IMG/VR virus record: IMGVR_UViG_3300032315_001715
Span: 310,001-374,000 of that record
Strand: one strand, 5' to 3'
Length of the DNA stretch: 64,000 bases
Positions 7,061 through 61,402 of this stretch are shown piece by piece (position 1 is the stretch's first letter; every line of letters starts with the position of its first letter). Under the pieces are notes generated by a model. The model did no database searches, was not told the origin of the DNA, and was given only the letters and a program-made list of their open reading frames with translations. The position numbers and the translations under genes are program-made.

Positions 7061-7678
7061 TCAACCTATTGTTGGAAAAAGTATCTCATTCATGAATTCG
7101 TCTGCACGTTCGGTCCCAAGGAGATTGACCAATGCCTTGCGGGTATGTTCATTTCGACGCTGTTGTAGACAATATCTATTCTGTCCAGCAACGATCGCCG
7201 TACGATCTCCCAAGCTGCCCAGGGTTGGTAGATAATGGACCAGCACTCGAACGGCTTCGTCGCCGATCAACCGCATCTCGTCGGGCGACGGTCGACATGC
7301 TAGCCAGTGCGGAGAAAAGATGTCTCCCCAGTCGGGCCGTTCGCGTGCGCGACCAACATCGATTTCTAAAAAAGGGTTGGTCGGTGCCGCCACCGGACTG
7401 AGATCCATAAACACGCCGGTGATCTTGTTTTCACCGGCGATCACATCAAAACCGTAGATCGGTGACGGGTCGTTTGCATGGGGAAACACGCAGCAATGCA
7501 CCACGCAGAAACGATCTTGGTTGAAGATTTCGACATGTGCTAGCCTAAATCGAGGGCTGCGGAATCTATGGTTTTCCCAGCCATAATCCGGTGTTGGTAT
7601 TGGAACAGCACCATGCTGATGCTCAATGACCTTGAGCAATCGTCGAGCTATTATCTCGACGAGATCAATGCAGCTCAT
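7061..7678 (-). CDS. pcyA: ferredoxin-dependent bilin reductase, PcyA-like
   Basis: RLAHVE, VVHCCVFP, PIYGFDVI, MDLSP, PDWGDIFS, QNRYCLQQRRNEHT; start moved to 7678. Confidence 0.88.
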   Translation of the reverse strand: MSCIDLVEIIARRLLKVIEHQHGAVPIPTPDYGWENHRFRSPRFRLAHVEIFNQDRFCVVHCCVFPHANDPSPIYGFDVIAGENKITGVFMDLSPVAAPTNPFLEIDVGRARERPDWGDIFSPHWLACRPSPDEMRLIGDEAVRVLVHYLPTLGSLGDRTAIVAGQNRYCLQQRRNEHTRKALVNLLGTERADEFMNEILFPTIG

Positions 7679-8231
7679 AGAGCTCGTTATAGATCTTGAT
7701 GGAATATTCGAATGCTTTTTTGGCTTCGACCGCATCTCGATCCCAAACCATGTTTAGCACGGTTTTTCGAACATAATCAACACATGCTCGGGGATCTCGG
7801 AATTCAAGATGCTTTTTTGGGAGGAATTGCAGCTTCTTTGCAATCATCTGTCCGCCATATAACCAACCAAGATAATGTGTATAGATATGCCCGTTGAGTT
7901 GTCCATGTAGATGTGGAAGATAATGGGTATTCAGATACCTGGCATATTCCAATGTGGACGGGCATGCAGTGACGCTGCATGCAGGACCGTTGGCAATATC
8001 TTGAACCAGAAGATGTCGGCGATTGAGATCGCTTGGGAACTGCATCTTGGTTTCAATGGCATCGGCAATCAAATATAGCTGATAACAATAGTTCTTGTAG
8101 ATTAGAGGATCTATTGACGCGTTGAGCAAGTCCTGTGCAAGCCGAGTGTGCTCAGCTTGATCGTGTAGATCGGCGCACGAGCTGCGCAGGTCTTGTTGTG
8201 AGATAGATTCCATCCAAAATAATGTTTTCAT
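7665..8231 (-). CDS. heme oxygenase
   Basis: LHDQAE proximal His, HIYTHYLGWLYGGQMI, EAKKAFEY. Confidence 0.88.
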   Translation of the reverse strand: MKTLFWMESISQQDLRSSCADLHDQAEHTRLAQDLLNASIDPLIYKNYCYQLYLIADAIETKMQFPSDLNRRHLLVQDIANGPACSVTACPSTLEYARYLNTHYLPHLHGQLNGHIYTHYLGWLYGGQMIAKKLQFLPKKHLEFRDPRACVDYVRKTVLNMVWDRDAVEAKKAFEYSIKIYNELYELH

Positions 8232-10802: not shown

Positions 10803-11017
10803 CCGCCCGATGGGTTAACTGTCAATTCTATGGTAAAAATCGCTATTGGATCCATCATGCGAAACAATGGTGCGTGGAAAAGTTTGGAGAATCCTCCAAA
10901 TCTGGACAGTGGATCATGTATGTAACACCGGCTAAAATGACATACGACTCGGCACGAGTGGTGACTTTCTTTAAAAGTCAACAAGACATGGCGTGGTTCA
11001 ATCTAACATGGGATTGA
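10760..11017 (+). CDS. hypothetical protein (WCxExFG small-protein type)
   Basis: KQWCVEKFG...W, FFKSQQDMAWFNLTW; start uncertain. Confidence 0.6.
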   Translation: MGRTMQCDQDNLGLTARWVNCQFYGKNRYWIHHAKQWCVEKFGESSKSGQWIMYVTPAKMTYDSARVVTFFKSQQDMAWFNLTWD

Positions 11018-11042
11018 CACTCCGCTGATGATGTGTTAAATT
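11014..11042 (+). promoter_or_regulatory. sigma70-type promoter for tRNA pair
   Basis: TTGACA-N17-TAAATT just upstream of tRNA 1. Confidence 0.55.
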
Positions 11043-11050
11043 CACTAAAT

Positions 11051-11125
11051 GCTTTGCTGTGCTGGTGGACAGCCGGAGGCCTCTAAAACCTCGCAGTGAT
11101 GGTTCAATTCCGTCGCAGAGCACCA
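11051..11125 (+). tRNA. tRNA with CUA anticodon (amber suppressor-type), discriminator A73
   Basis: Acceptor GCTTTGC/GCAGAGC + ACCA; anticodon loop CT-CTA-AA (11083-11085); T arm GATGG-TTCAATT-CCGTC. Confidence 0.82.
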
Positions 11126-11130
11126 AGTTT

Positions 11131-11206
11131 GCTTCCATAGTTCAGTGGTCAGAACGGAGACCTCTAAATTCTCTTGTCGCAGGTTCGAATCCTGCTGGAA
11201 GCGCCA
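11131..11206 (+). tRNA. tRNA with CUA anticodon (amber suppressor-type), discriminator G73
   Basis: Acceptor GCTTCCA/TGGAAGC + GCCA; D arm GTTC/GAAC; loop CT-CTA-AA (11164-11166); T arm GCAGG-TTCGAAT-CCTGC. Confidence 0.9.
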
Positions 11207-11272
11207 ACATAAATAGGAACGATGATGAGCGAGCTGTAGAACCACCTTAAGACACACATCGATTTAACCTTG

Positions 11273-11304
11273 AACCTGCATGGCTTCTGTCATGCAGGTT
11301 TTTT
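11273..11304 (+). terminator. intrinsic terminator after tRNAs
   Basis: AACCTGCATGG-N6-TCATGCAGGTT followed by T run. Confidence 0.7.
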
Positions 11305-11332
11305 CTTGACCTCAAATCCAAAGGAGAAACAA

Positions 11333-11719
11333 ATGGAGGAAATACTCGAGGAAATACGCGGTATAGCACCGGGCTGGGCCGGGCCAACTACCAAAGCACC
11401 GAACCCTTGGATAGTGGAGAATTTTGAAACCATTATTGCAAGGCATCTTCATTCGGTTCGAAATCCTGATGAGATTGAAATTGATCCAGATGACGGTGCA
11501 ATAACGATTTACTGGTCCAGTCGTGAGCTCAAGCAAACCTTCTCATTATCGTTCCAGTCTAGAACAACGATCATTGGGGTTCTAACGGATCTTCACAATT
11601 ACACGGGATATCCACCGTGGCGACTGCCAATTGAGGATTTGGGATCCATACAAGAAAAGCTAAATCACCCCGCGGTTAAAATACTAACAACCATTGCTAA
11701 CCACAACAGGAGCGAATGA
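11333..11719 (+). CDS. hypothetical protein
   Basis: AAGGAG RBS before ATG 11333. Confidence 0.65.
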   Translation: MEEILEEIRGIAPGWAGPTTKAPNPWIVENFETIIARHLHSVRNPDEIEIDPDDGAITIYWSSRELKQTFSLSFQSRTTIIGVLTDLHNYTGYPPWRLPIEDLGSIQEKLNHPAVKILTTIANHNRSE

Positions 11720-11720
11720 T

Positions 11721-12305
11721 ATGACCACAGAAATCGCATGCAAGGACGCTATTTTCCATTTTAACAAGCATCATTTAGTGGATCCAACCACTCCGCCGTG
11801 GACCATCAAGACCGGCGGCAAGACCTATTACGTGAATCACGTTGAGTGTAACTTACCTTGGAGCACCAAGGAAACACCTGATAATGCCAGCACCAAGGGC
11901 GCAATCAAGATCAAGAAAGCGCTGCTGATCATCAACGACAGCAACGACGCCGAGCTTCGACAGCTTACCAACGGAGATCTTTCAAGGATACGGGCCAACA
12001 AAAGAAACTATGCCAGGATCCTTGTCAGCAGCCGCAAGGACGAGATCAAGGAGTATCTCAAGAAAAACTCCATCTCTCACGGTAAGATCGTACCGGTCTC
12101 TGGTAGCTGCGGATCTTCGTTTGATTTGATTGATATCAAGAATAAATCGGACATGGTGCTGTTATCCCTGTCATTCCATGATTGTTATCGTATCCTTCAA
12201 CCAAATGAAGTTTACTACAAGGTCTATGACGATCCTGATCTTCTTGCTCGCCTCGATGCTGACGATTACTATGACGGCGACAATGATGACGACTCTGAAG
12301 AATAA
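11721..12305 (+). CDS. hypothetical protein
   Basis: AGGAG RBS; FHFNKHHL..PPWTIK..YYVNHV motif; acidic tail. Confidence 0.7.
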   Translation: MTTEIACKDAIFHFNKHHLVDPTTPPWTIKTGGKTYYVNHVECNLPWSTKETPDNASTKGAIKIKKALLIINDSNDAELRQLTNGDLSRIRANKRNYARILVSSRKDEIKEYLKKNSISHGKIVPVSGSCGSSFDLIDIKNKSDMVLLSLSFHDCYRILQPNEVYYKVYDDPDLLARLDADDYYDGDNDDDSEE

Positions 12306-12317
12306 CTAGACCGTGCC

Positions 12318-13184
12318 ATGTTTACATCGCAAAATACAGTCATGAAACCAAAGATATTAACAGTAGGGCATGCTTGCCTAGATATCGTGCATACCGTCCA
12401 GCTGATACCAAAATCAAACACCAAGGTTGCTAGCGACAGGGTGCAGATACAGGTAGGGGGTAATGCGGCTAATGCTGCGGTTGCACTGTGTGATCTAGGA
12501 GCTAGTGCTGATCTATGTACGGTGCTTGGTCGGGATTCACACCCTTTCACCCGGATACTGTTAGCATTGCTAAAGGAACGATGCGTTGGCGTCAATTACT
12601 GTCGATTTGACGAGGTCCAGGATTGCCCGAATTCAACCATCATGGTATTGCCAAATGGTGAACGGGCTATCGTAAACTGGCAAGCAGATGAAATACGATC
12701 TGCCGTGTCAGCACCGGCATCTCTAGACCCATATCAAATGGTCATTGCCGATGCATATCGATTACCAATGATTCGACAGATATTTGCCCTGGCTCGAAGC
12801 AAGGGTGTGCCGACCATGCTTGATGTTGACGGAGTGTTACCTGACATTGGACTGCTACCTTCGGCTGACCATATATGGTTTAGCCAAGAAGCGTGGCGAT
12901 GCCAGCGGATATCATTATCGGATTTACAGGCTAGATTTGGAGGCATCGTTGGTGTAACCGACGGCGATCGTCCGGTAACCTGGATTGATCGAGATGGCAA
13001 GATACGATATCATCAGCCGCCCCAAGTTATTGCTAAAAATACGCTTGGGGCAGGCGACGTGTTTCGAGCTAGATTAGCTCTTGGGCTTTGCTTGAACGAA
13101 TCCGTCAAAGATGCGATTAATGCCGCTTGCATAACCGCAGGTGAGCACATTATCGAACAACCGCTAACTAGGACCATCCAATGA
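12318..13184 (+). CDS. PfkB family carbohydrate kinase
   Basis: GGNAANAAVAL, NTLGAGDVF. Confidence 0.9.
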   Translation: MFTSQNTVMKPKILTVGHACLDIVHTVQLIPKSNTKVASDRVQIQVGGNAANAAVALCDLGASADLCTVLGRDSHPFTRILLALLKERCVGVNYCRFDEVQDCPNSTIMVLPNGERAIVNWQADEIRSAVSAPASLDPYQMVIADAYRLPMIRQIFALARSKGVPTMLDVDGVLPDIGLLPSADHIWFSQEAWRCQRISLSDLQARFGGIVGVTDGDRPVTWIDRDGKIRYHQPPQVIAKNTLGAGDVFRARLALGLCLNESVKDAINAACITAGEHIIEQPLTRTIQ

Positions 13185-14032
13185 AAACCCTAACCAGCAA
13201 CGTTGATTCCAGCGTAAATTTCATCGAAAAGGAATTAACTGGGTTCATCGAAAGCCGATATGTCAGGCGGCGTCGAGAATATTTCATTGCGTATCTCAGC
13301 AGCCAGACCGGTTGCAATCGAGGATGCAAGATGTGCCATCTCACCGCTACTAAGCAAACGCAATCCACAAATTGTGATCTGCAGGATTTTGTTGATCAGC
13401 TTGAAACAGTGTTTGCACACTACGACAAGGATTTACCTGCCGATTACATCCATGTAAACTGGATGGCTAGGGGAGAACCACTGGCTAATCCTACTGTTAC
13501 AGAGACTGGCACCGAATTGCTGATTAGATTGGGACAAATGGCTAGATCCAGGAATCTGCCTATCAAGTTCAATGTATCTACCATCATGCCGTTGACCATG
13601 AGAAAATCGTTGGTTGAGGTCTTCCCCGTGATAACACCGACCATTTATTATAGCATCTATTCGGCTAACCAGGACTTCCGTAACAAGTGGTTACCCGGAG
13701 CAATGCCGATTGATCGATCACTGAAAATGCTGGCCGAATATCAAAGATTCAGCAAAAAGATCATCAAATTTCACGGCGCGTTTATCAAGGACGAAAATGA
13801 TCGAGAAAAAGATGTATTAAATATGCTCACAGCCATACAACAGCACGGCATAGTTGGGGAATTCAACATCGTGAGATACAATCCATTTAGCGATGATCAG
13901 GGTGTTGAAAGTCCGTATCTAAAGCAGATCATGCAGTTGATCGCCGAGCGCATGCCATGCAAGATCATCCCTAGGGTTGGCGAGGATGTTTATGCCAGCT
14001 GCGGAACGTTTGTCGGAGAGGGTACCATTTGA
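13181..14032 (+). CDS. RlmN/Cfr-like radical SAM protein (divergent)
   Basis: SSQTGCNRGCKMC (CxxxCxxC), MARGEP (cf. MGMGEP), C-terminal ASCG. Confidence 0.8.
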   Translation: MKTLTSNVDSSVNFIEKELTGFIESRYVRRRREYFIAYLSSQTGCNRGCKMCHLTATKQTQSTNCDLQDFVDQLETVFAHYDKDLPADYIHVNWMARGEPLANPTVTETGTELLIRLGQMARSRNLPIKFNVSTIMPLTMRKSLVEVFPVITPTIYYSIYSANQDFRNKWLPGAMPIDRSLKMLAEYQRFSKKIIKFHGAFIKDENDREKDVLNMLTAIQQHGIVGEFNIVRYNPFSDDQGVESPYLKQIMQLIAERMPCKIIPRVGEDVYASCGTFVGEGTI

Positions 14033-26734: not shown

Positions 26735-27313
26735 ATGGTAAACATTTTTCTCGTCAGCGACACTCACTTCGGTCATAAGAACATCTGTCTGTTCAACGGA
26801 CCGGACGGAAGTCCACTGCGTCCATGGGATGATCCCGATGAGATGGACGAGGCCATGGTCGAAAGATGGAACGGTGTGGTTAAACCAAATGACGTGGTTT
26901 ATCACCTCGGTGACGTGGTGATGAACCGCCGATGTCTTGCTACCGTTGCCCGGCTCAACGGAGACAAACGGCTAATACTCGGTAATCACGATATTTTTGA
27001 TCACAGCGACTATCTCGTGCATTTCAAACGGTTGCACGGTAGTTACAAGCTGGACAACTTCCTGCTAACCCATATACCGGTGCATATTGACTCAGTTGCC
27101 CATTGGACTGAATGTAACATCCACGGGCATGTACATGCCCACGATATTCCCAGTGGCAAGTATTTCAACGTCAGCGTGGAAATGATCGGCTACACGCCGA
27201 TTAGCCTTGAGGATGCTAGGGTTCGAATCAGGGAAAAGCAGGAAAAATATAAGGTTGACATGCAGCAGAATGATGCTAATTTGCCAATTGAAAATAGGAG
27301 AACTGCCGAGTGA
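26735..27313 (+). CDS. calcineurin-like metallophosphoesterase
   Basis: SDTHFGH, LGD, GNHD, THIP, HGHVH. Confidence 0.9.
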   Translation: MVNIFLVSDTHFGHKNICLFNGPDGSPLRPWDDPDEMDEAMVERWNGVVKPNDVVYHLGDVVMNRRCLATVARLNGDKRLILGNHDIFDHSDYLVHFKRLHGSYKLDNFLLTHIPVHIDSVAHWTECNIHGHVHAHDIPSGKYFNVSVEMIGYTPISLEDARVRIREKQEKYKVDMQQNDANLPIENRRTAE

Positions 27314-28767
27314 CAACACCTACCGCTACTAAAGTTCGTTCAATTCGTCGCGACGAGGGCTATCAGGATCCAATCAAGCTTTATCTCAAGGATGTGGGCA
27401 AGGCTCCATTGCTGACCCATAAGCAAGAGATCGAAATTAGCCAAACCATCGAAGCTTCGAAGCAGGCCATCACTGATCGGCTTCTTGGGATCCCCTTGAC
27501 CATTGCTACCGTTACATCCTGGATTGATGCTGCACGCATCAATGGACAGGATGCCCTCGAGGTGTTTGATATTGAACTGGATGATACCGACTCGGTTAGT
27601 CCAGACTTTCTAATACAGCTCGATCAGGTCAAGGAACTTTGTGAACGCTATCATACCGACGTGTCGAATATCGAACTGAGATCCCAGTTGGTCGAAATGT
27701 TCAACGAGCTTCCGTTGAATCCTGCTAGCATTGGCCATCTCATGGAGCAGATGATCGGCTTTAACAAGCAGGTCGTAACCATTGACGGTGAAATGCTGCG
27801 CCTGGCCGAAAGCTGCGGGATCAAGCGAGAGGAATGGCTCAAGGACTATCTGTTGAATGACGATCTTTCATGGATCGAGGCTTGTGCCGGGCGATCGTAC
27901 GAACTAATGCGAACGACATATCATGAAAAAATGTCCACCATTGCAGATCGAATCAATGAGATCAACGGTCTTACCGGGATGAGCCTTCGAGAGCTCCGAG
28001 AAACCGTCAAGGATTTGCGGGTACAAGCCAAGATCAAGGAAGCCGCTATCCAACGAATGGTTACTTCCAATCTGCGTCTCGTGGTTAGCGTGGCCAAGCG
28101 ATACAATCAAAACAACCCAACAACCCTGCTCGATCTAGTGCAGGAAGGCAACATCGGCCTGATCAAGGCCGTTGAAAAGTTCAAATGGCGCCTAGGCTAT
28201 CGGTTTAGCACATATGCTACTTGGTGGATTCGCCAGGCTATCATCAAGGCTACTACCGAACACAGCAAGACCATTCGGGTGCCTAGCCACGTTCTTGATG
28301 CGATCAAGAAGATCAATCGGGCTGCCAAGGAATATGTGAGCTCACACGGTTACGAGCCAAGTGATGCTGAGCTTGGCAAGCTGGTTGGCATGGATCCCGA
28401 AAAGGTCAATCGCATGCTACAGGTTGCCAAGGATCCGATCAGCCTCGAAACTCCGGTCGGTGATGATGAGGACTCAAACATCGGCAACTATATCGAGGAT
28501 CATTCCGCAATTGATGCCATTGAAAAGATCAACGATGACGATGTTGCTCGTGTGGTGGCCGAAGCACTCGGCACGCTAAACAGTCGAGAAGAGCGCGTAA
28601 TCCGCATGCGGTTTGGTATCGGTACCATGGACGAGCACACCCTGGAGGAGATTGGTAAGCGGTTTAACGTAACCCGTGAGCGGGTTCGACAGATCGAAGC
28701 CAAGGCCTTGCAGCGCCTGCAGACCCCGCAGCGCCTCAAGGAGCTCGAGTCGGCACTCGAGGACTAA
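27310..28767 (+). CDS. rpoD: RpoD-like primary sigma factor lacking region 1.1
   Basis: DPIKLYL (1.2), long non-conserved region, SNLRLVVSVAKRY, DLVQEGNIGL, STYATWWIRQAI, TLEEIG...TRERVRQIE. Confidence 0.95.
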   Translation: MTTPTATKVRSIRRDEGYQDPIKLYLKDVGKAPLLTHKQEIEISQTIEASKQAITDRLLGIPLTIATVTSWIDAARINGQDALEVFDIELDDTDSVSPDFLIQLDQVKELCERYHTDVSNIELRSQLVEMFNELPLNPASIGHLMEQMIGFNKQVVTIDGEMLRLAESCGIKREEWLKDYLLNDDLSWIEACAGRSYELMRTTYHEKMSTIADRINEINGLTGMSLRELRETVKDLRVQAKIKEAAIQRMVTSNLRLVVSVAKRYNQNNPTTLLDLVQEGNIGLIKAVEKFKWRLGYRFSTYATWWIRQAIIKATTEHSKTIRVPSHVLDAIKKINRAAKEYVSSHGYEPSDAELGKLVGMDPEKVNRMLQVAKDPISLETPVGDDEDSNIGNYIEDHSAIDAIEKINDDDVARVVAEALGTLNSREERVIRMRFGIGTMDEHTLEEIGKRFNVTRERVRQIEAKALQRLQTPQRLKELESALED

Positions 28768-37650: not shown

Positions 37651-38127
37651 CTACAAGGTGGTCAACCATTCTTCAAACGCCAGTCGGTCGTCGACTGGCT
37701 TTTTTGCGCCAGCGATCATTCGGTCCGGCATGAATTCCTGGAATTCATTGATAACACAGCACTTCTTGGGCCAGGTATTGGTAACAAACGTTTCTTTGAT
37801 TTTTTTTGAGATCTCAACTGAATGCTGATCTAGAAAACTGCGGGAATCAATGCCGTTGGATTGATTCCAGTTGGCATGTGCGGCTTGATATCTGCAAATG
37901 CCTGGACTGGCTTTCCACGAACCTATGTGTTCACTCAACTGAAACTCCCACAAGGAGTATCTAGTCAACAGATTTTCAGAATATCGATCCTCATATTTTT
38001 TTACAAACGGTATGAATAACTTATAATAACCGTGGGTATTTTTTTTATATTCGTCGACATTGAACTGCTCATAAAAGCCAACGTTGGTGCTTTTTCTAAA
38101 ATCGACTCTCATCATTAGGTACATCAA
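37651..38127 (-). CDS. hypothetical protein
   Basis: 158 aa ORF, AAGGA RBS; ends in TAG. Confidence 0.5.
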   Translation of the reverse strand: MMYLMMRVDFRKSTNVGFYEQFNVDEYKKNTHGYYKLFIPFVKKYEDRYSENLLTRYSLWEFQLSEHIGSWKASPGICRYQAAHANWNQSNGIDSRSFLDQHSVEISKKIKETFVTNTWPKKCCVINEFQEFMPDRMIAGAKKPVDDRLAFEEWLTTL

Positions 38128-51465: not shown

Positions 51466-52563
51466 ATGGCACACAAGTACGATATGGCCGTATTCATCGG
51501 CCGATTCCAACCATTCCATCTAGGTCACCGAGCGGTGATCGAACAGGGGCTTGAACAAGCAGACCACGTCGTGGTGCTTGTTGGCTCCGCCCGCAGCCCG
51601 CGTTGCCATCGCAATCCGTTCAGCTTTGCCGAGCGCAAGGAAATGATCCTCGGTGCATTTTCCGGTGAGGTTCGCGATCGGGTCATCGTCCTGCCACTCG
51701 AGGATGCTGCATACAATGATGCGCAGTGGGTCCTCAATGTGCAAAAGCAGGTAGAGCAGGGTGCATGGTACGCCGGTCTGGCTGGTGCTACACTAGGTAC
51801 AATTTCCGAGAAGGTCCGCGTTGCGCTCATCGGTCACAGCAAGGACGCAACCAGCTACTATCTCAAGCTGTTCCCGCAGTGGGATAACATTGAGGTGTCC
51901 AATTTCCGAGATCTCAACGGCACGCTGATCCGCAGCACGTTTTTCAGCAACATCGGACACATGTGGGTCAAGGACGCTGACGGTCACCGCGCCGGCGATC
52001 TCCCGCGTGATGCAACCATCACTGGCAACGTGCGAGAGTTCCTCGAAGGATTCATTGACACGCCAGAATACAAGCTGATCCGGGATGAAAACGAGTTCAT
52101 CCGCAAGTACCGTGCGAGCTGGGCATCAGCGCCTTACGCACCGACATTCGTTACCGTGGATGCCATCGTGGTGCAGAGTGGACATGTGCTGCTGGTGCGC
52201 CGAGGTGCCAACCCGGGCAAGGGACTGTGGGCCATGCCTGGCGGGTTCATCAACGCTGATGAACGCATCCGCAATGCCGTGATCCGCGAGCTTCGTGAGG
52301 AAACCGGCATCAAGGTGCCTGATGCGGTGCTGCGTGGTAGCATTGTTGAACAGGACGTGTTTGACGATCCCAATCGATCGGCACGTGGACGCACGATCAC
52401 GCATGCGTTCCTCATCAAGCTGCGTGACGAGACCGCGCTGCCCAAGGTCAAGGGCATGGACGATGCTGACAAGGCACGATGGGTTCCCATCAGCCAGCTC
52501 AAGCCCGAGGATTTTTTTGAAGATCACTACCATATAGTGATGTCAATGTTGGCTCGGATCTGA
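51466..52563 (+). CDS. nadM: bifunctional NMN adenylyltransferase / ADP-ribose pyrophosphatase (NadM-Nudix)
   Basis: GRFQPFHLGH, RNPFSFAER; Nudix box GGF...AVIRELREETG. Confidence 0.95.
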   Translation: MAHKYDMAVFIGRFQPFHLGHRAVIEQGLEQADHVVVLVGSARSPRCHRNPFSFAERKEMILGAFSGEVRDRVIVLPLEDAAYNDAQWVLNVQKQVEQGAWYAGLAGATLGTISEKVRVALIGHSKDATSYYLKLFPQWDNIEVSNFRDLNGTLIRSTFFSNIGHMWVKDADGHRAGDLPRDATITGNVREFLEGFIDTPEYKLIRDENEFIRKYRASWASAPYAPTFVTVDAIVVQSGHVLLVRRGANPGKGLWAMPGGFINADERIRNAVIRELREETGIKVPDAVLRGSIVEQDVFDDPNRSARGRTITHAFLIKLRDETALPKVKGMDDADKARWVPISQLKPEDFFEDHYHIVMSMLARI

Positions 52564-52566
52564 ATC

Positions 52567-52938
52567 ATGTACACCGTGCAAGAAATGCGCGACATCGTCG
52601 CCCTGTGCCGGTTCGAGGAGTGGAACATCGTGGTTCGCATGGATGGAACTCGGCCGTATCTCCAGGTACATGCACCCAATGGACGGGATGCTGAAACCGG
52701 CTTGCCCATGCCATGGACCGGTCGCAAGTGGATGCTGAGTCCCCATATGTGCAAGAACGAGATCGTCACCACGGCTTTCAAGGCGGTGATGACTGCCATG
52801 GAGCATGAGGTCCGTGAGAGCTTTCGTTATCGCGGTGTAGCGATCTTCAATCCGCACCAGGACCCGGATAAGCTCGTTGACTTTGTCAGCGATGATGCTA
52901 ATATGCAAGAGAGAACTAACGTGGCGTTTGCCGCGTAA
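52567..52938 (+). CDS. conserved phage hypothetical protein
   Basis: WTGRKWMLSPHM...AMEHEVRESF; lies between NAD genes. Confidence 0.75.
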   Translation: MYTVQEMRDIVALCRFEEWNIVVRMDGTRPYLQVHAPNGRDAETGLPMPWTGRKWMLSPHMCKNEIVTTAFKAVMTAMEHEVRESFRYRGVAIFNPHQDPDKLVDFVSDDANMQERTNVAFAA

Positions 52939-52995
52939 TCCAATACTACCCCGTGGGGATAGACCCCGCGGACAACAAAGCAAAGGAGATTTGCA

Positions 52996-54387
52996 ATGCG
53001 TTATAATCTACTGTTGGATACCGACAGCTACAAGGCAAGCCATGCCTTCCAGTATCCGCCGAACACCACCCGGGTATTCAGCTACATCGAAAGCCGAGGT
53101 GGCGAATTTGATCGCACGGTGTTCTTCGGCCTGCAGATGTACCTCAAGCAATACCTGTCCACGCCCATTACCCAGGACATGGTCGATGAGGCCGCAGAAT
53201 TCTGGGCCGCACACGGCGAGCCCTTCAATCGCGAAGGCTGGGAATACATCGTCAATGCACACGGCGGTCGCCTGCCGGTGGTGATCAAGGCCGTTCGCGA
53301 GGGTGCGGTGATCCCGACCCGCAACGTCTTGCTCACCATAGAAAACACCGATCCGCGGTGCTTCTGGCTCACCTCCTTCCTGGAAACCGCGTTGCTGCGT
53401 GCCGTTTGGTACCCGACGACGGTGGCCACGCTGAGCTGGCACGGCAAGCAGATCATTCGGTCCGCCCTGGCAACGTCCGCCGAGGACGTTGAGGGCCAGC
53501 TGCCGTTTAAGCTGCACGACTTTGGTGCCCGCGGTGTAAGCTCCCGGGAGAGCGCCGGTCTCGGTGCCGCTGCCCACCTGGTGAACTTCATGGGATCGGA
53601 CACCGTCACCGGTGTTCTCTACGCCCGGGAATTCTATGGCGCTCCCATGGCAGGGTTTTCCATCCCCGCTGCTGAACACTCGACCATCACCAGCTGGGGT
53701 CGCAGCCGTGAAGCTGACGCATATGCCAACATGCTGGCACAGTTTGGCAAGCCCGGTGCGCTGTTTGCCGTGGTCAGCGACAGCTATGACATCATGAACG
53801 CTGCGCGGGAGATCTGGGGCGGCGACCTCAAGCGGTCGGTGATGTCCAGTGGTTCCACCCTGGTGGTGCGTCCGGACAGCGGCGACCCACTGACGGTGCC
53901 GGTGGATGTCGTGGAAGCACTGGGCGAGCGGTTCGGCTACACCCTGAACTCCAAGGGGTTCCGCGTGTTGCCGAGCTGCGTGCGGGTGATCCAGGGAGAT
54001 GGCATCACCATCAACAGCCTGCCCAAGATCCTGGGCAATCTGCTCGGTTGTGGTTGGAGCGCGGACAACATGGCGTTTGGCATGGGCGGCGGGCTGTTGC
54101 AGCTGGTCAACCGCGATACGTTGAAGTTTGCCATGAAATGCTCGGCTGCCATGATCGACGGCGAATGGGTTGACGTGTTCAAGGATCCCATCACCGACGC
54201 TGGCAAGCAGAGCAAGCGGGGCCAGCTGATGCTGACCCGGGAGACCGGCAAGTGGGAGACCATGCGACTGGGCAGCGGTTTTGACTGGGCCAACAGCCTG
54301 CACACCGTGTGGCAAAATGGCGAGCTTGTGCGGGATTGGACCTTTGATGAGGTGCGTGCGGCCAGCAACGAGCCCGTGCTTGATTAA
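52996..54387 (+). CDS. nadV: nicotinamide phosphoribosyltransferase
   Basis: DTDSYKASH, LHDFGARG, IPAAEHS, VSDSYD, RPDSGDP, IQGDGI, FGMGG. Confidence 0.96.
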   Translation: MRYNLLLDTDSYKASHAFQYPPNTTRVFSYIESRGGEFDRTVFFGLQMYLKQYLSTPITQDMVDEAAEFWAAHGEPFNREGWEYIVNAHGGRLPVVIKAVREGAVIPTRNVLLTIENTDPRCFWLTSFLETALLRAVWYPTTVATLSWHGKQIIRSALATSAEDVEGQLPFKLHDFGARGVSSRESAGLGAAAHLVNFMGSDTVTGVLYAREFYGAPMAGFSIPAAEHSTITSWGRSREADAYANMLAQFGKPGALFAVVSDSYDIMNAAREIWGGDLKRSVMSSGSTLVVRPDSGDPLTVPVDVVEALGERFGYTLNSKGFRVLPSCVRVIQGDGITINSLPKILGNLLGCGWSADNMAFGMGGGLLQLVNRDTLKFAMKCSAAMIDGEWVDVFKDPITDAGKQSKRGQLMLTRETGKWETMRLGSGFDWANSLHTVWQNGELVRDWTFDEVRAASNEPVLD

Positions 54388-55330: not shown

Positions 55331-55387
55331 CGAATGACGCAGGTAAATACCACACAAACAAATATCCCATCTGCGGAGCTCCGTGCA

Positions 55388-57256
55388 ATGACTGATTTTT
55401 TCAAACCAACCAATCGACCTTCCAATCTGCATGAGACCCTGCAATACAGCAACGTTGGTCTTGCTGAAATGCGTGTTGCAGCAATGGCTGGTCCAGATGC
55501 TCCGCTGCATGTGTTCGTGGACAATACTGAACCCATGCCGGTGACGCTGGGATCAGAAACCATAACCATCATAGGTAACATCGCCGTACCCACCACGGTG
55601 AATGTTACATCCACGCCCACCGATCCCGTGCATGTGCATCTAACCGAGGTTGGATCCAGTGGGTTGCTCGACGTGGCTTATCTACCGGTTGGGCAATCTA
55701 CCTCACCATGGATCGTAGTTGGCAATGTGAACATAGCCACCACCAATGGTGGTATTGAGGTCAACAACGACACGGGTAATCCGTTGCGCATCATCGGCAA
55801 TGTCAACACCACGGTCATTAGCACGGTTTCTGTCACACAGGGAACCTCTCCTTGGGTGGTGATCGGCAACACCAACATCACCAATACACCTACCGTTGCG
55901 CTATCAAGCAACGCGGTCACGGCTACGCAGGGAACATCTCCTTGGGTGATGTCAGGCAACGTGAATGCCAGCATCACGGGCACGGTGACAACGACCGTCG
56001 TGGCAGGTGCCACGGATGCGTTTGGTAGGTTGAGGACCTCTGATGGGTTCACCCTGGGAGACTACAAGCATACATATGGAATTGATCCGAATTTCAGGGA
56101 CACCCTTATTAACGGCGGTACCGTCACCCACATACCCAACCAAGCAGCCGCAAGGCTTGCCACGAGCAACAACGTGGCCAGCCGTGCCATACACCAGACC
56201 AAGATGTACCACAACTACATGCCCGGTAAGAGCCAATTGATCGAAAGCACCATCAACTTTTACGAGGCCACGGCCAACGTGACCAAGCGCACGGGCTATT
56301 TCGACGATCTCAACGGCATCTACTTTGAGCAGACCGGTATCGGCGAGCTGGCATTTGTGATAAGGACCAACACCAGTGGCACTCCCAGCGATGTCCGACG
56401 GGTTACGCAATCCCAGTGGAACCAAAATACCTGCAACACCGCGATCGCGGGCACGTCAACCGACGGGTCTAACTACGGGGTATTTGGTACATGGAACCTG
56501 GATATCACCAAGACGCAGATATTCTGGACCGACTTCCAGTGGTTGGGCGTTGGGCGCGTGCGTTGTGGGTTCATCCACAACGGTGAGACCGTCGTAGCAC
56601 ATGAGTTCTACAACAGCAACAACCTACCAGTGGTGTACATGGCCAATCCAAATCTGCCCATTCGCTGTGAGATATTGAACACCGGTGTCACCGCAGGAGC
56701 GTTCTTTGACCAGATATGCTCCACGGTGATATCCGAGGGCGGATATTCGGAAAGTGGGATAGACTTTAGTATCAACTCTGGTACAACAGGTCAAGCAGTG
56801 ACCCTCGCCAACGGGGTGTATCCCATACTGGCCTGGAGGTTGAAGAACACGTTCAGGGGCTATCCTAACCGCGTGGTGGTTCGTCCCGGAAACATGAACA
56901 TCTATGCCGAAAACCGTCCTGCTTACTGGACGCTGATCAAGCTGGATAGCCTGAGCAACATAACCCTTGGTAGCAGCACCTGGACCAGCGCCGACGACGA
57001 CTCTGCCGTGGAATACAACCTCACCGCCACGGCATTCACCGGCGGCGACAGAATGGATGGAGGCTTACTGGGAACCACCAGCCCAGGCGGCAGGGGCACT
57101 GGTGTTGCTCCTATCAATAATCCTAGCTTGGCCAAGAAGAACTTCATCGCACAGAACCAGGATTCAACCAATAGCGAGATATATGTCCTGTGTGCCCAAG
57201 CAATTGGCGGCACGACCACGGTTTGGTGTGACGTTCAGTGGCGCGAGATCTACTAG
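55388..57256 (+). CDS. virion structural protein with VTQGTSPW-type repeats
   Basis: Repeats then conserved DAFGRLR...YMPGKSQ...DFQWLGVGRVRCGF domain; start moved to 55388 (TAAATA 55344, GGAG); ends in TAG. Confidence 0.7.
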   Translation: MTDFFKPTNRPSNLHETLQYSNVGLAEMRVAAMAGPDAPLHVFVDNTEPMPVTLGSETITIIGNIAVPTTVNVTSTPTDPVHVHLTEVGSSGLLDVAYLPVGQSTSPWIVVGNVNIATTNGGIEVNNDTGNPLRIIGNVNTTVISTVSVTQGTSPWVVIGNTNITNTPTVALSSNAVTATQGTSPWVMSGNVNASITGTVTTTVVAGATDAFGRLRTSDGFTLGDYKHTYGIDPNFRDTLINGGTVTHIPNQAAARLATSNNVASRAIHQTKMYHNYMPGKSQLIESTINFYEATANVTKRTGYFDDLNGIYFEQTGIGELAFVIRTNTSGTPSDVRRVTQSQWNQNTCNTAIAGTSTDGSNYGVFGTWNLDITKTQIFWTDFQWLGVGRVRCGFIHNGETVVAHEFYNSNNLPVVYMANPNLPIRCEILNTGVTAGAFFDQICSTVISEGGYSESGIDFSINSGTTGQAVTLANGVYPILAWRLKNTFRGYPNRVVVRPGNMNIYAENRPAYWTLIKLDSLSNITLGSSTWTSADDDSAVEYNLTATAFTGGDRMDGGLLGTTSPGGRGTGVAPINNPSLAKKNFIAQNQDSTNSEIYVLCAQAIGGTTTVWCDVQWREIY

Positions 57257-58941: not shown

Positions 58942-59691
58942 ATGAAACCTCTCTATAACATCAACGGCCTTGTCCATTGGACGCAACGTGAAATCTCAAT
59001 GCGGGAAGCCATGCAAGAGAGATTTGCCGCGGAGGTGTTTGAGTGGCTTCGTGGAACCAATCCTGCTTGGCGGTTCGATCGCGTGGAAGCGCCCATCATG
59101 ATTCCCCGCACAATGATCAACCCTAACTACACCAACGACGATCTCTGGGTGTTTGAACGGCACGACGAGCACGAGCCTGAGCTGGTGGCACGACCAGAAA
59201 CCACACCCAGCACCTATGCCTGGATGGTTGACCAGCTGCAAGGCCACAACGGCATCCGCCTTCCCTGGTGCGTGTGGCAAAGCGGCAAGAGCTTCCGTGC
59301 TGAGCAGGACCAGGTGCTGAAGAACATGCGCCTCAAGGAATTCTACCAGATGGAATTCCAGTGCGCTTACTCCTCGGACACCGCCAACGACTATCATGCC
59401 GACTGCCTTGAACCCATGCGCAAGATGCTAGGGTCGGCGCTGGGCCTGCCCACCCGCGTGATTGCCAGCGACCGGCTGCCCAGCTACAGTGAAATCACCA
59501 TGGACGTGGAGGTGGATACCGGTGAGCGTTGGATGGAGGTTTGCTCTATCAGCCGTCGCACGGACTTTCCCATCAGGAACCGTTACCAGGGCAAGAAGGG
59601 CATCGTGGAGACCGACATCATGGTGCTTGAGATCGCCATTGGACTTGATCGCTGCGTGAACGCACGTACCATCGCTAACAGTCTGATCTAA
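58942..59691 (+). CDS. alpha2-type glycyl-tRNA synthetase-like catalytic core, no anticodon-binding domain
   Basis: ARPETT, motif 2 QSGKSFRAE...RLKEFYQMEFQ, WMEVCSISRRTDF, motif 3 EIAIGLDR, then ends. Confidence 0.8.
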   Translation: MKPLYNINGLVHWTQREISMREAMQERFAAEVFEWLRGTNPAWRFDRVEAPIMIPRTMINPNYTNDDLWVFERHDEHEPELVARPETTPSTYAWMVDQLQGHNGIRLPWCVWQSGKSFRAEQDQVLKNMRLKEFYQMEFQCAYSSDTANDYHADCLEPMRKMLGSALGLPTRVIASDRLPSYSEITMDVEVDTGERWMEVCSISRRTDFPIRNRYQGKKGIVETDIMVLEIAIGLDRCVNARTIANSLI

Positions 59692-60145: not shown

Positions 60146-61402
60146 ATGAGCACATTTTCCTGCCCGCTGGTTCGGGTATCCGAGGTCATTGACCATCCCA
60201 ATGCCGACCGGCTCAGTATCGTCAAGCTGGAAGGTCTGGGTTATACCTGCATCAGCGGCAAGCTGGAGGACGGTAGCCCGCGCTACAAGGCGGGAGACTG
60301 GGTGGTTTACATTCCCAGCGCCGCCATTTTGCCTGAATACCTGCTCAAGGAAATGGATTTCTGGAATGCAGAAACCCGCAAGGGTATGCTAGCAGGCAGC
60401 AACGGCGATCGGGTAAAGCCTCTCCGTTTGCGAGGCATCTTCAGCGAGGGTGTGCTGTATCCAGCATCAGTCACTGTGAATGACAACACTGAGATGATGC
60501 CTGAAGGTTATCTGCGCCGATACTGGCAAGTGGCCCTAGGAGAAAGCGATGGCGAGCTTTTGATGCGCATCGTGCGGCTCATGCCCGTGAATAAGCTGGA
60601 GGCTGTTGAGAGTATTGCCGGGCGCGATATGAGCGAACGTCTGGGCATCACCAAGTACGAGCCGCCCATCCCAGTCCACATGGCGGGTGAGGTAGCCAAC
60701 CTGTTTGACCACACCGTGCGCTACGATTTTGAGCGACTGGAGAGCGTGCCTGACATGTTTGCTTCAGACATGACGGTAACGGCCACTGAAAAGCTGCACG
60801 GAACCTTTTGCGCCATTGTCTATGAGCCTGGGCTAAACCACGCCGAGATGTTTGGCACCAACGGTGACATCATCGTCCACAGCAAGGGTCTCGGTGGTCA
60901 GGGCCTGGCGTTCAAGAACAACGCAGCCAATGACGGTAACCTCTATGTCAAGACCCTGCGCAAGCTGCTTGGTGACGGTCTGGAAGATCGCTTTCGCACC
61001 CTGGCCACCAGCTATGCTGGCAAGCGTTATGCCATCCTGGGCGAGATCTATGGAAAGGGTGTGCAGGACCTAGCCTATGGCACCAAGGAGCCTGAGTTCC
61101 GCATGTTTGATGTGATGGTGGATGATATCTTCCTACCACAGGACGAGCTGGGATTTGATCATTCATTGCATGGCATCCCGTTTGCACCCGTCCTCTACAA
61201 TGGACCGTTTAACATTGAGGCGCTTACCGCGGTGCGAGACGGCAAGACAACTGTAGGCGGAGATAACATCCGCGAAGGCATCGTGGTGCGTGCGGGTTGG
61301 TGGCAGCGCCATCCCATTCATGGTCGTCGGATCGCCAAGATGATCAGCCCTGACTACCTCTTGCGCAAGGTCAAGGGTGGCGAAGCAACGGAATATACCT
61401 AA
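60146..61402 (+). CDS. RNA ligase (DRB0094/Rnl5 family)
   Basis: HPNADRL OB-like N-domain, LRGIFSEG, TEKLHGT, GEIYG, FDV, REGIV, KMISPDYL. Confidence 0.9.
   Translation: MSTFSCPLVRVSEVIDHPNADRLSIVKLEGLGYTCISGKLEDGSPRYKAGDWVVYIPSAAILPEYLLKEMDFWNAETRKGMLAGSNGDRVKPLRLRGIFSEGVLYPASVTVNDNTEMMPEGYLRRYWQVALGESDGELLMRIVRLMPVNKLEAVESIAGRDMSERLGITKYEPPIPVHMAGEVANLFDHTVRYDFERLESVPDMFASDMTVTATEKLHGTFCAIVYEPGLNHAEMFGTNGDIIVHSKGLGGQGLAFKNNAANDGNLYVKTLRKLLGDGLEDRFRTLATSYAGKRYAILGEIYGKGVQDLAYGTKEPEFRMFDVMVDDIFLPQDELGFDHSLHGIPFAPVLYNGPFNIEALTAVRDGKTTVGGDNIREGIVVRAGWWQRHPIHGRRIAKMISPDYLLRKVKGGEATEYT

What the first reader, a model, noticed from the sequence alone, without database searches (positions are those of the whole stretch)
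11051..11206. Two tandem CUA-anticodon (amber suppressor-type) tRNAs in a phage that reads in the standard code
Seen: two complete cloverleaves with encoded CCA, both with loop CU-CUA-AA, G1:C72, C2:G71, U3:A70 and a 31-39 mismatch, but with different bodies and discriminators (A73, G73). Long structural and lysis ORFs here have no in-frame TAG, and TAG appears to be a true stop (29728, 37651, 41296, 57256, 58437). Established: phage suppressor tRNAs usually accompany TAG-recoded genomes. Inference: these drive conditional readthrough (phage genes elsewhere or host genes), or are relics or precursors of recoding.
Basis: partly seen in the sequence, partly recalled or inferred. Interest (0 to 1): 0.8.

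Follow-up and report, generated by a model that had tools for sequence, protein, structure and literature searches.

The report
Conserved amber-suppressor tRNA pair, standard-code megaphage
A 453-kb freshwater phage that otherwise reads its genes in the standard code keeps two working-looking tRNAs that read the UAG stop codon, and the only UAG that interrupts a reading frame in the 107 kb examined sits 31 bases behind them, in a tiny conserved leader in front of a transcription terminator.

Summary
ARAGORN finds two tRNAs in the window, at 11051-11125 and 11131-11206, both with anticodon CUA.

They are kept by selection, not relics:
- The cassette sits at the same place, upstream of the same 128-aa gene, in five lineages whose version of that gene is 52-88% identical.
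- The loop CUCUAAA never changes.
- tRNA2 is canonical and its stems covary.
- tRNA1 is non-canonical, with a 4-bp D stem, a 5-nt D loop and a C31·A39 mismatch. Two compensatory D-stem changes support that fold.

The window is bases 310001-374000 of a 452,799-bp metagenomic phage contig. About 107 kb of it, including lysis and virion genes, reads in the standard code. TAG ends roughly 10-16% of genes, and no release-factor gene was seen. About 76% of the genome could not be fetched.

The cassette has its own sigma-70-type promoter and intrinsic terminator. The 65 nt after tRNA2 are 91% conserved and unstructured. They hold the phage's late-gene start motif, then ATG ATG NGC GAG CTG TAG. That TAG is in frame, through the terminator hairpin, with the next gene.

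My best reading is site-specific UAG readthrough, with this leader as first candidate target. This is inferred, not shown. The inserted amino acid is unknown.

The parts
11014..11042 (+). Sigma-70-type promoter of the tRNA cassette: TTGACA, 17 nt, TAAATT, with TG before the second hexamer
   Evidence: Consensus scan gives 10 of 12 matches. Where the region aligns, the -35 hexamer is invariant while the spacer is only 50% identical. L058 has TTGACA-17-TATTAT in front of its single tRNA.
11051..11125 (+). tRNA1, anticodon CUA. Non-canonical: D stem 11-14/20-23, 5-nt D loop GUGGA, C31·A39 mismatch (canonical numbering; gene positions 30 and 38), A73, encoded CCA
   Evidence: Called by ARAGORN but below the Rfam tRNA threshold. 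It is identical in L056 and L059. L060 differs at 6 sites, 4 of which are two compensatory D-stem pairs, G-C to A-U and U-A to C-G. Outside the window's own phage (the 452,799-bp contig and an identical 102.6-kb contig), it was not found in IMG/VR, nor in GTDB genomes.
11131..11206 (+). tRNA2, anticodon CUA. Canonical cloverleaf, G73, C31·U39 mismatch (derived in this lineage), encoded CCA
   Evidence: ARAGORN; Rfam RF00005 at 65.3 bits. Orthologues occur in L056, L058, L059 and L060, and similar CUA tRNAs in four other viral contigs. In these, 97.4% of cells are paired and 13 pairs carry compensatory changes. L058 and L060 have A31-U39. L056 has A73.
11208..11215 (+). CATAAATA, the phage's NATAAATA gene-start motif (like a T4-type late promoter)
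   Evidence: Invariant in all five lineages. ATAAATA occurs 20 times in the window, 16 of them intergenic against 12% expected, mostly 4-33 nt before start codons of lysis and structural-looking genes.
11222..11239 (+). Leader mini-ORF ATG ATG AGC GAG CTG TAG, with the amber codon at 11237-11239 followed by A
   Evidence: The stretch with its AGGA is 97% identical across lineages, against 50% for the promoter spacer and 68% for the start of the next gene. It is the only ATAAATA-linked start in 107 kb whose ORF is closed by TAG and then continues, for +159 codons.
11240..11332 (+). Stretch between the amber codon and the ATG of orf128, open in the leader's frame
   Evidence: It is open and in frame in all five lineages, while the other two frames close after 3 and 9-23 codons. 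Substitutions show no third-position bias, so it is not constrained as protein (read directly).
11272..11307 (+). Intrinsic terminator: 13-pair hairpin 11272-11301 followed by a T run
   Evidence: Terminator scan. Two pairs change compensatorily. The stretch with the hairpin folds at z about -3. The hairpin starts 32 nt after the TAG in every lineage.
11333..11719 (+). orf128, a conserved gene of unknown function that always follows the cassette, with its own Shine-Dalgarno sequence
   Evidence: Homologues at 52-88% identity; gene calls. No Pfam, PHROG or NCBIfam family. The fold matches only uncharacterised bacterial proteins.
11721..12305 (+). orf194, unknown function, same co-directional block
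   Evidence: Gene call in L018; no family.
12342..13184 (+). PfkB-family (ribokinase-like) kinase, same block
   Evidence: Pfam PF00294 at 85.6 bits; NCBIfam ribokinase-like.
13181..14032 (+). Radical-SAM protein distantly like the RNA methyltransferases RlmN/Cfr, same block
   Evidence: PHROG 27142. NCBIfam Cfr/RlmN models score 42-53 bits, far below their cut-offs. A CxxxCxxC motif is present. Homologues lie beside large tRNA arrays in L007, L009 and L014.

Best explanation
The two genes encode functional UAG-decoding (amber-suppressor) tRNAs. Selection keeps them in a clade of freshwater megaphages that read their genes in the standard code.

They form a small operon of their own:
- a sigma-70-type promoter;
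- tRNA1;
- a 5-nt spacer;
- tRNA2;
- a 65-nt conserved trailer;
- an intrinsic terminator.

They do not serve a recoded genome, at least in the quarter of it that could be read. I propose that they act on a few specific UAG codons.

The first candidate is the conserved amber codon 31 nt behind tRNA2. It closes a 5-codon leader ORF that starts in the phage's usual late-gene start context. It lies 32 nt before the terminator hairpin and is in frame, through that hairpin, with the next gene.

Proposed mechanism:
- Without suppression, the ribosome stops too far upstream to disturb the hairpin, so transcription ends.
- With charged suppressor tRNA, the ribosome translates through the hairpin region and RNA polymerase reads on into orf128, orf194, the PfkB kinase and the RlmN/Cfr-like radical-SAM gene.

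Shown: the existence, structure and conservation of the tRNAs; standard code in 107 kb; the anatomy and conservation of the leader.

Inferred: charging, decoding and the coupling to termination. The inserted amino acid is unknown.
For: tRNAs real and constrained:
- Gene calls and models.
- The cassette is syntenic in five lineages, with both tRNAs in four of them and tRNA2 alone in L058, while orf128 is only 52-88% identical.
- The loop CUCUAAA is invariant.
- tRNA2 family: 13 pairs with compensatory changes.
- tRNA1: all six substitutions are neutral for the structure, and four of them form two compensatory D-stem pairs.

Own expression signals:
- Promoter and terminator.
- Where the region aligns the -35 is invariant and the spacer 50% identical; L058 has its own TTGACA promoter.
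- Compensatory changes in the terminator.

Standard code:
- 92-96% ORF coverage under code 11, with no gain when TAG is read as sense.
- The virion protein ends at the end of its profile.
- L058's nuclease ends in TAG exactly where the window's orthologue ends in TGA.
- No release-factor domain in the gene tables.

Leader:
- The trailer is 91% identical, and its SD plus mini-ORF 97%.
- It is unstructured, with MFE -6 kcal/mol and z -0.5.
- The ATAAATA start motif is enriched before genes.
- It is the only TAG-closed start that continues, in 107 kb.
- The frame is open through the hairpin in all lineages.

Precedent: in E. coli a ribosome halted more than 27 nt before a hairpin cannot repress termination, while moving the stop next to the terminator (28 to 5 bp before it) drops termination from about 90% to under 10% (PMC4824070).
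Against: - No aminoacylation, decoding or transcript data exist. The only 'metatranscriptomic' run holds one short contig over tRNA1 and is probably DNA.
- The leader is very short and close to both candidate start sites. The same paper notes that ribosomes rarely catch RNA polymerase within the first 100 bp unless polymerase pauses, and no pause site is known here.
- An open frame of 31 codons is not rare by chance (about 0.2-0.4). With no insertions or deletions among the lineages its conservation is not independent evidence.
- The trailer's conservation fits other roles equally well: a 3'-trailer small RNA, a processing signal, or a lambda-bar-like minigene.
- The phage's own genes end in TAG in roughly 10-16% of cases without extra back-up stops, so efficient suppression would lengthen many of its proteins.
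- L058 lacks tRNA1, so the pair as such is not essential.
- About 345 kb of the genome was not examined.
Confidence: 0.4

Rival explanations
1. Partial recoding elsewhere. The unsampled three quarters of the genome holds genes with in-frame TAG, for instance capsid, portal or other late genes. The tRNAs exist to translate them, as in alternatively coded phages.
For: Only about 107 of 453 kb could be fetched. In recoded phages some modules stay in standard code. Major capsid, portal and terminase genes were not seen in the sampled part.
Against: - The sampled part includes the modules most often recoded in such phages: spanins and holin, an endolysin-like gene, and long structural-looking genes with late start motifs. 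None carries an in-frame TAG.
- TAG is a common stop in late-type genes.
- No RF2 gene was seen.
- G+C is 49%, not low.
Confidence: 0.2
2. Untargeted, low-level suppression. The tRNAs read UAG wherever it occurs. This could disturb host proteins during takeover, buffer amber mutations in a very large genome, or be a stable state from which recoding could later arise. The neighbouring leader is unrelated to them.
For: Borges et al. propose acquisition of a suppressor tRNA by standard-code phages as a step towards recoding. The 31-39 mismatches could make weak suppressors (inference). Similar CUA tRNAs sit in other viral contigs, one inside an ordinary 20-tRNA array, with no such leader behind them.
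Against: - TAG is not depleted in this phage.
- The cassette is old: it is shared by lineages with 52% protein identity, with no sign of drift towards recoding.
- This reading does not explain why the 65 nt behind tRNA2, with the amber codon, are as conserved as the tRNAs.
Confidence: 0.25
3. The conserved trailer has a function of its own, unrelated to suppression. It could be a small RNA released from the tRNA precursor (a 3' external transcribed spacer type), a short late transcript like lambda 6S RNA, or a bar-like minigene. The TAG is then just its stop codon.
For: An unstructured conserved stretch followed by a strong terminator with a U tail is the usual anatomy of a small regulatory RNA. 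T4 also encodes small stable RNAs beside its tRNA genes, and lambda carries minigenes (my own knowledge, not checked here).
Against: - The start context is that of real genes of this phage.
- The stop is TAG in every lineage and in three further lake metagenomes.
- It is the one frame that runs on into the next gene.

None of this is decisive.
Confidence: 0.3
4. The tRNA genes are relics, or serve a non-decoding role such as a decoy for anticodon nucleases, an integration site or a primer.
For: tRNA1 fails the general tRNA model. Both have a weakened anticodon stem. tRNA-repair genes (RNA ligase, Thg1-like) lie 49-52 kb away.
Against: - The loop is invariant, the stem changes are compensatory, CCA is encoded, and the promoter is conserved.
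- No known nuclease targets a CUA anticodon (my own knowledge).
- No integrase lies nearby in the gene tables.
Confidence: 0.05

Closest known systems
Suppressor tRNAs of alternatively coded (TAG-recoded, code 15) phages such as crAss-like and Lak phages
   Same: A phage-encoded tRNA with anticodon CUA in a large phage that also carries other tRNAs and translation-related genes.
   Different: In those phages structural and lysis genes are full of in-frame TAG, and some genomes encode RF2. Here 107 kb with lysis and virion genes has none, TAG ends roughly 10-16% of genes, and no release-factor gene was seen.
Standard-code phages that carry a suppressor tRNA (Borges et al. 2021, Agate clade)
   Same: Standard code plus a suppressor tRNA. 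This is the category the finding falls into.
   Different: That case is a TGA suppressor in one genome close to recoded relatives, read as a step towards recoding. Here a CUA pair is kept across lineages down to 52% protein identity. No recoded relative was found, TAG is not depleted, and a conserved amber-closed leader sits next to the tRNAs.
Laboratory amber suppressors of E. coli (for example the tRNA-Trp-derived Su7)
   Same: The anticodon loop CUCUAAA, recalled from memory and not tested here.
   Different: The bodies do not match any isoacceptor clearly. The best similarity is 76%, between the related CUA tRNA of contig L022 and that contig's own tRNA-Trp. tRNA2's D arm and T loop are absent from 185,579 cellular genomes.
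Ribosome-coupled leader attenuators (the pyrBI type) and the position effect of stop codons on intrinsic terminators
   Same: Promoter, short leader ORF, terminator overlapped by the leader's frame, then co-directional genes. The stop lies 32 nt before the hairpin, just past the 27-nt limit measured in E. coli.
   Different: The gate here would be an amber codon read by tRNAs encoded on the same DNA, not UTP-sensitive pausing. No natural case is known to me, and nothing was tested.
tRNA-Pyl (ARAGORN's label)
   Same: Anticodon CUA; tRNA1 has a 5-nt D loop.
   Different: No 6-bp anticodon stem and no 3-nt variable loop. GG in the D loop and TTC in the T loop are present. No pyl genes appear in the gene tables.

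Membership tests
Canonical tRNA (Rfam RF00005) | Score at or above the gathering threshold of 29 bits, with a cloverleaf of 7/4/5/5-bp stems | tested here: met
   tRNA2 scores 65.3 bits. In the family 97.4% of cells are paired and 13 pairs covary.
Canonical tRNA (Rfam RF00005) | The same feature, for tRNA1 | tested here: not met
   tRNA1 gets no RF00005 hit; its best is tRNA-Sec at 21.4 bits against 47. ARAGORN still calls it. Acceptor, anticodon and T arms are regular. The D stem is shifted (11-14/20-23, 5-nt loop) and supported by two compensatory pairs.
Amber-suppressor tRNA | Anticodon CUA in a 7-nt loop with U33 and a purine at 37 | tested here: met
   The loop is CUCUAAA in both tRNAs and invariant in all lineages.
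Amber-suppressor tRNA | Is aminoacylated and inserts an amino acid at UAG | not testable with these tools
   No expression or charging data. The isoacceptor origin is unresolved. The discriminator of tRNA2 varies, G73 or A73.
tRNA-Pyl | 6-bp anticodon stem, 3-nt variable loop, one base between acceptor and D stems, no G18G19 and no T54-Psi55-C56 | tested here: not met
   The anticodon stems have 4-5 pairs and the variable loops 5 nt. GG and TTC are present.
tRNA-Sec | Anticodon UCA, 8/5 or 9/4 acceptor/T stems, long variable arm | tested here: not met
   Anticodon CUA, 7/5 stems, 5-nt variable loop. The Rfam score is below threshold.
TAG-recoded (code 15) phage genome | In-frame TAG in conserved genes, and higher coding density when TAG is read as sense | tested here: not met
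   Not met in the roughly 107 kb read: 92-96% coverage under code 11, no gain with TAG as sense, and no convincing TAG-split gene except the leader. The rest of the genome was not tested.
TAG-recoded (code 15) phage genome | Phage-encoded RF2 or other code-change genes next to the suppressor tRNA | tested here: not met
   No release-factor domain in the gene tables of the fetched loci; the middle of the window has no such table. The class II synthetase-core-like gene at 58942-59691 belongs to a family also common in Rhizobiales.
Leader-peptide transcription attenuator | Promoter, translatable leader ORF, intrinsic terminator within reach of the leader's frame, and downstream genes on the same strand without a promoter between | tested here: met
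   All parts are present and conserved. Only 31 nt lie between the T run and the ATG of orf128.
Leader-peptide transcription attenuator | Termination changes with translation of the leader | not testable with these tools
   This needs reporter or transcript measurements.
HDV-like (theta) ribozyme next to a phage suppressor tRNA | Match to an HDV-like ribozyme model beside the tRNA | tested here: not met
   A permissive Rfam scan of 10950-11350 gives no ribozyme hit. I did not check whether theta ribozymes have a model in Rfam 15.

The most novel reading that the evidence does not exclude
The cassette is a natural genetic switch gated by nonsense suppression. The phage makes its own amber-suppressor tRNAs. 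Once charged, they read the single conserved UAG of a 5-codon leader right behind them, carrying the ribosome through the terminator hairpin and so opening transcription (and an in-frame translation path) into orf128, a kinase and an RlmN/Cfr-like RNA methyltransferase. This would be a timer or checkpoint built from a stop codon, its own decoder and a terminator. It would also explain why standard-code phages keep suppressor tRNAs.
Probability: 0.25. Interest if true: 0.85.

Novelty: new variant of a known kind. Interest (0 to 1): 0.62.

Why it matters
Suppressor tRNAs in phages are explained today by genome recoding. Those found in standard-code phages are treated as a passing step towards it.

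Here a pair of them is old and conserved in a clade that stays in the standard code, so it needs another explanation. The conserved amber-closed leader beside the tRNAs offers one that a few constructs could test.

If it holds, it would be a new kind of natural regulatory device: suppression-gated attenuation. It would also supply two naturally evolved amber-suppressor tRNA scaffolds, one of unusual architecture, that are absent from cellular genomes. Both are of interest for genetic-code engineering.

If it fails, the case is still a well-documented example that suppressor tRNAs can persist without recoding.

Tried and rejected
**Nearest relatives**
- Near-identity searches of the tRNA region in annotated phages and in E. 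coli genomes found nothing.
- The distant search gave only short matches of tRNA2 to a tRNA-Asn and a tRNA-Lys of unrelated phages.

**Functional readthrough extensions**
- TAG-ended genes continue for only 2-61 codons with no domain-like sequence.
- The one 154-codon continuation belongs to an antisense ORF that is probably spurious.

**Isoacceptor origin**
- Comparison with 75-88 tRNAs from related arrays gave no clear nearest type, at most 76%.
- Pattern scans of 185,579 cellular genomes found neither tRNA body.

**Relatives found through the radical-SAM gene**
- These are at most 68% identical, share almost no gene order, and have no CUA tRNA nearby.
- The useful orthologues came through orf128 instead.

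**Lost or limited calls**
- Two IMG/VR scans were lost to a spacing error in my patterns.
- One look-up was lost to a wrong stop-codon trim, and two to wrong start codons.
- A search for further amber-closed leaders before terminators had too little power. It produced one weak, SD-less hit at 37679-37699.

**Other dead ends**
- The leader motif occurs nowhere else in the loci or in IMG/VR.
- Function of orf128 and orf194: no family, and no solved fold. Only uncharacterised bacterial proteins match.
- The 249-aa class II synthetase core at 58942-59691 was considered as a dedicated charging enzyme. I dropped it as evidence because about 60%-identical proteins are common in Rhizobiales genomes.
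- Sequencing runs showed only that the cassette occurs in several freshwater metagenomes. No usable RNA data were found.
- The published idea of 4-bp anticodon stems concerns the top pair 27-43, not 31-39, so it does not apply directly.

Full report
**1. The observation**

ARAGORN finds exactly two tRNA genes in the 64-kb window, at 11051-11125 and 11131-11206 on the + strand, both with anticodon CTA. The tRNA-Pyl label follows from the anticodon alone.

- Both encode CCA and have the loop CUCUAAA.
- Both have G1:C72, C2:G71 and U3:A70.
- The discriminators are A73 and G73.
- Position 31-39 is mismatched, C·A in tRNA1 and C·U in tRNA2.

One correction is needed.
- tRNA2 scores 65.3 bits on the general Rfam tRNA model.
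- tRNA1 reaches no Rfam threshold; its best hit is tRNA-Sec at 21.4 bits against 47.

**2. Where the window comes from**

The window is bases 310001-374000 of IMG/VR contig IMGVR_UViG_3300032315_001715, which is JGI Ga0335319_1173557 and 452,799 bp long.
- A 102.6-kb IMG/VR contig and a 187-kb ENA scaffold carry the same sequence.
- It is a megaphage of freshwater lakes.

Its genes in and near the window include:
- an ATP-dependent DNA ligase, an RpoD-like sigma factor, an RNA ligase and a Thg1-like enzyme;
- NAD salvage genes;
- heme oxygenase plus a bilin reductase;
- spanins and a holin;
- a virion protein 50% identical to that of cyanophage S-RIM32.

The host is unknown. The bilin reductase is closest to that of a Pelagibacter phage, at 31%.

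**3. Which code the phage uses**

I walked outward from the window by exact-protein look-ups and obtained window coordinates -16.4 kb to 91.5 kb, about 107 kb.
- Standard-code ORFs cover 92-96% of these stretches, apart from one 10-kb stretch that holds two tRNA genes (83%). Reading TAG as sense adds nothing real.
- TAG ends roughly 10-16% of called genes. The codons behind TAG stops are no richer in back-up stops than those behind TAA or TGA.
- The virion protein 55334-57256 ends at the last position of its PHROG profile.
- In the relative L058, the nuclease ends in TAG exactly where the window's TGA-ended orthologue ends.
- No release-factor domain appears in the gene tables.
- TAG-ended genes have no domain-like continuation.
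- G+C is 49%.

Further ordinary tRNAs lie to the right of the window: Cys, three Leu, Met, Pro and two Ser.

**4. Are the tRNAs under selection?**

Homologues of the 128-aa gene just downstream led to orthologous loci in four further lineages:
- L056/L057, with orf128 88% identical;
- L059, at 59%;
- L058, at 56%, on a 423,548-bp contig with the same gene order from ligase to spanin;
- L060/L061, at 52%.

All carry CUA tRNAs at the same place. Four lineages have both, and L058 has tRNA2 only.

In the alignment the loop CUCUAAA never changes.

tRNA1:
- It is identical in three lineages.
- In L060 it differs at six sites. Four of these are two compensatory pairs, G11-C23 to A-U and U13-A21 to C-G.
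- These define a 4-bp D stem at gene positions 11-14/20-23 with the 5-nt loop GUGGA.
- The other two changes lie in loops.
- This explains the poor Rfam score and shows a constrained, unusual fold.
- C31·A39 is kept in every tRNA1.

tRNA2:
- The C31·U39 mismatch is derived, because L058 and L060 have A31-U39.
- The discriminator is A73 in L056 and G73 elsewhere.
- Four other IMG/VR contigs carry similar CUA tRNAs, one inside a 20-tRNA array and one contig with two of them.
- Over these and the orthologues the cloverleaf has 97.4% of cells paired and 13 pairs with compensatory changes.

Neither tRNA body was found in 185,579 cellular genomes. The isoacceptor origin and the inserted amino acid remain open.

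**5. Expression signals**

- A sigma-70-type promoter (TTGACA, 17 nt, TAAATT, with TG) ends 9 nt before tRNA1.
- A 13-pair hairpin with a T run follows 65 nt after tRNA2.
- Where the region aligns, the -35 hexamer is invariant while the spacer is 50% identical.
- L058 has TTGACA-17-TATTAT before its single tRNA.
- Two hairpin pairs change compensatorily.

**6. The unexpected part: the trailer**

The 65 nt between tRNA2 and the hairpin are 91% identical across lineages. That compares with 95% for tRNA2, 50% for the promoter spacer and 68% for the start of orf128. The trailer is predicted to be unstructured, with MFE -6 kcal/mol and z -0.5.

It begins with CATAAATA.
- ATAAATA occurs 20 times in the window, 16 of them between genes where 12% is expected.
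- It usually lies 4-33 nt before the start codons of lysis and structural-looking genes.
- It therefore resembles a T4-type late promoter or start signal. The comparison with T4 is from memory.

Six bases after the motif comes ATG ATG (A/C)GC GAG CTG TAG, at 11222-11239.
- Of 16 sites in the 107 kb where ATAAATA is followed within 10 nt by ATG, 11 open real ORFs and four open short ORFs closed by TAA or TGA.
- Only this one opens an ORF closed by TAG that then continues, for 159 codons.
- The continuation runs in frame through the hairpin into the ATG of orf128 at 11333 in all five lineages. The other two frames close within 3-23 codons.
- Substitutions in the continuation show no third-position bias, so it is not conserved as protein.
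- The TAG, both ATGs and the motif are also unchanged in contigs from three other lake metagenomes.

**7. How it most likely works**

Shown: two constrained CUA tRNAs with their own promoter and terminator; standard code in a quarter of the genome; one conserved amber codon in a gene-start context beside them.

Inferred: the tRNAs are charged and read UAG at a few sites, and this leader is one of them.

The spacing fits a ribosome-coupled attenuator.
- The hairpin starts 32 nt after the TAG.
- In E. coli a ribosome halted more than 27 nt upstream cannot prevent terminator folding.
- Moving the stop from 28 to 5 bp before a terminator drops termination from about 90% to under 10% (PMC4824070).

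With suppression, the ribosome would cross the hairpin and transcription would continue into four genes:
- orf128;
- orf194;
- a PfkB kinase;
- a radical-SAM protein distantly like RlmN/Cfr (42-53 bits, far below the family cut-offs; CxxxCxxC present).

Homologues of that last gene sit beside large tRNA arrays in other huge phages.

Against the model:
- The leader is very near its start sites, so coupling would need a polymerase pause.
- An open 31-codon frame is not rare.
- Other roles fit the trailer.
- Efficient suppression would lengthen many of the phage's own proteins.

I give the general reading (functional suppressors in a standard-code phage) about 0.8. I give the specific switch about 0.25.

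**8. Comparison with what is known**

Phage suppressor tRNAs are well known from TAG- or TGA-recoded phages. Borges et al. also describe a standard-code relative that acquired one, read as a step towards recoding. A 2026 survey of jumbo phages again links CUA tRNAs to code 15.

This case belongs to the second kind but differs from it:
- It is a conserved pair.
- One member has an unusual architecture.
- TAG is not depleted.
- No recoded relative was found.
- A conserved amber-closed leader lies next to the tRNAs.

It is not tRNA-Pyl or tRNA-Sec, and no ribozyme model matches beside the tRNAs.

**9. Verdict**

This is a new variant of a known kind. A testable and possibly new regulatory reading remains open. 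The main gap is that most of the genome could not be read.

Noticed in passing
window 58942-59691: A 249-aa stand-alone class II aminoacyl-tRNA synthetase core (Pfam tRNA-synt_2b, closest to GlyRS) with no anticodon-binding domain. More than 1,100 homologues exist, many on 400-550 kb phage-like contigs, and about 60%-identical ones in Rhizobium and Agrobacterium. Both suppressor tRNAs share G1:C72 and C2:G71. Whether this enzyme charges them is open.
   Followed up: partly
window 60146-61402 and 62890-63702: An RNA ligase and a Thg1-like tRNA 5'-end repair enzyme lie close together, with NUDIX, QueC-like and radical-SAM genes next to them. This looks like a tRNA-repair or modification island.
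   Followed up: no
window, 20 sites (for example 9445, 14274, 30089, 31535, 32971, 38876, 42682, 45320, 47122): The motif ATAAATA is strongly enriched between genes (16 of 20 sites). It often lies only 4-7 nt before the ATG, which suggests late promoters that give leaderless or nearly leaderless mRNAs.
   Followed up: partly
window 27310-28767: The phage encodes a full-length RpoD-like primary sigma factor (460 bits to an RpoD model).
   Followed up: no
window 7061-8231: Heme oxygenase plus a ferredoxin-dependent bilin reductase. The reductase is closest (31%) to that of Pelagibacter phage Mosig rather than to cyanophage PebS/PcyA, so the host need not be a cyanobacterium.
   Followed up: partly
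window 13181-14032; L007, L009, L014: The RlmN/Cfr-like radical-SAM gene sits among 15 and 31 tRNA genes in two distant huge-phage contigs and near 3 in another. This hints at a tRNA-directed function.
   Followed up: partly
L026 5037-5110 and 5773-5846; L023 11222-11297 and 12412-12746: Another viral contig carries two different CUA tRNAs about 660 nt apart, both with C31·A39. A further one carries a CUA tRNA about 1.1 kb from a tmRNA gene.
   Followed up: no
window 11044-11129, run X15: A 151-nt contig from a library labelled metatranscriptomic holds a tRNA1-like sequence (2 differences) with a different upstream flank. tRNA1 may therefore exist in another genomic context.
   Followed up: no
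window 51466-54387: NAD salvage genes: an NMN adenylyltransferase/NUDIX fusion and a nicotinamide phosphoribosyltransferase.
   Followed up: no
L020 15324-17570 and 9518-9982 (left of the window): A family B DNA polymerase with an intein, and an Acb1-type anti-CBASS gene.
   Followed up: no
L056 905-913 (= window 11219-11227): In L056/L057 a C-to-T change turns the leader start into three consecutive in-frame ATGs. This fits the leader frame being read, but it is a single anecdote.
   Followed up: no
ENA scaffold_13 versus the JGI contig: Placed on the JGI contig's coordinates, the 187-kb ENA scaffold would run about 89 kb past that contig's end. The genome may be circularly permuted, or the assemblies may differ there.
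   Followed up: no
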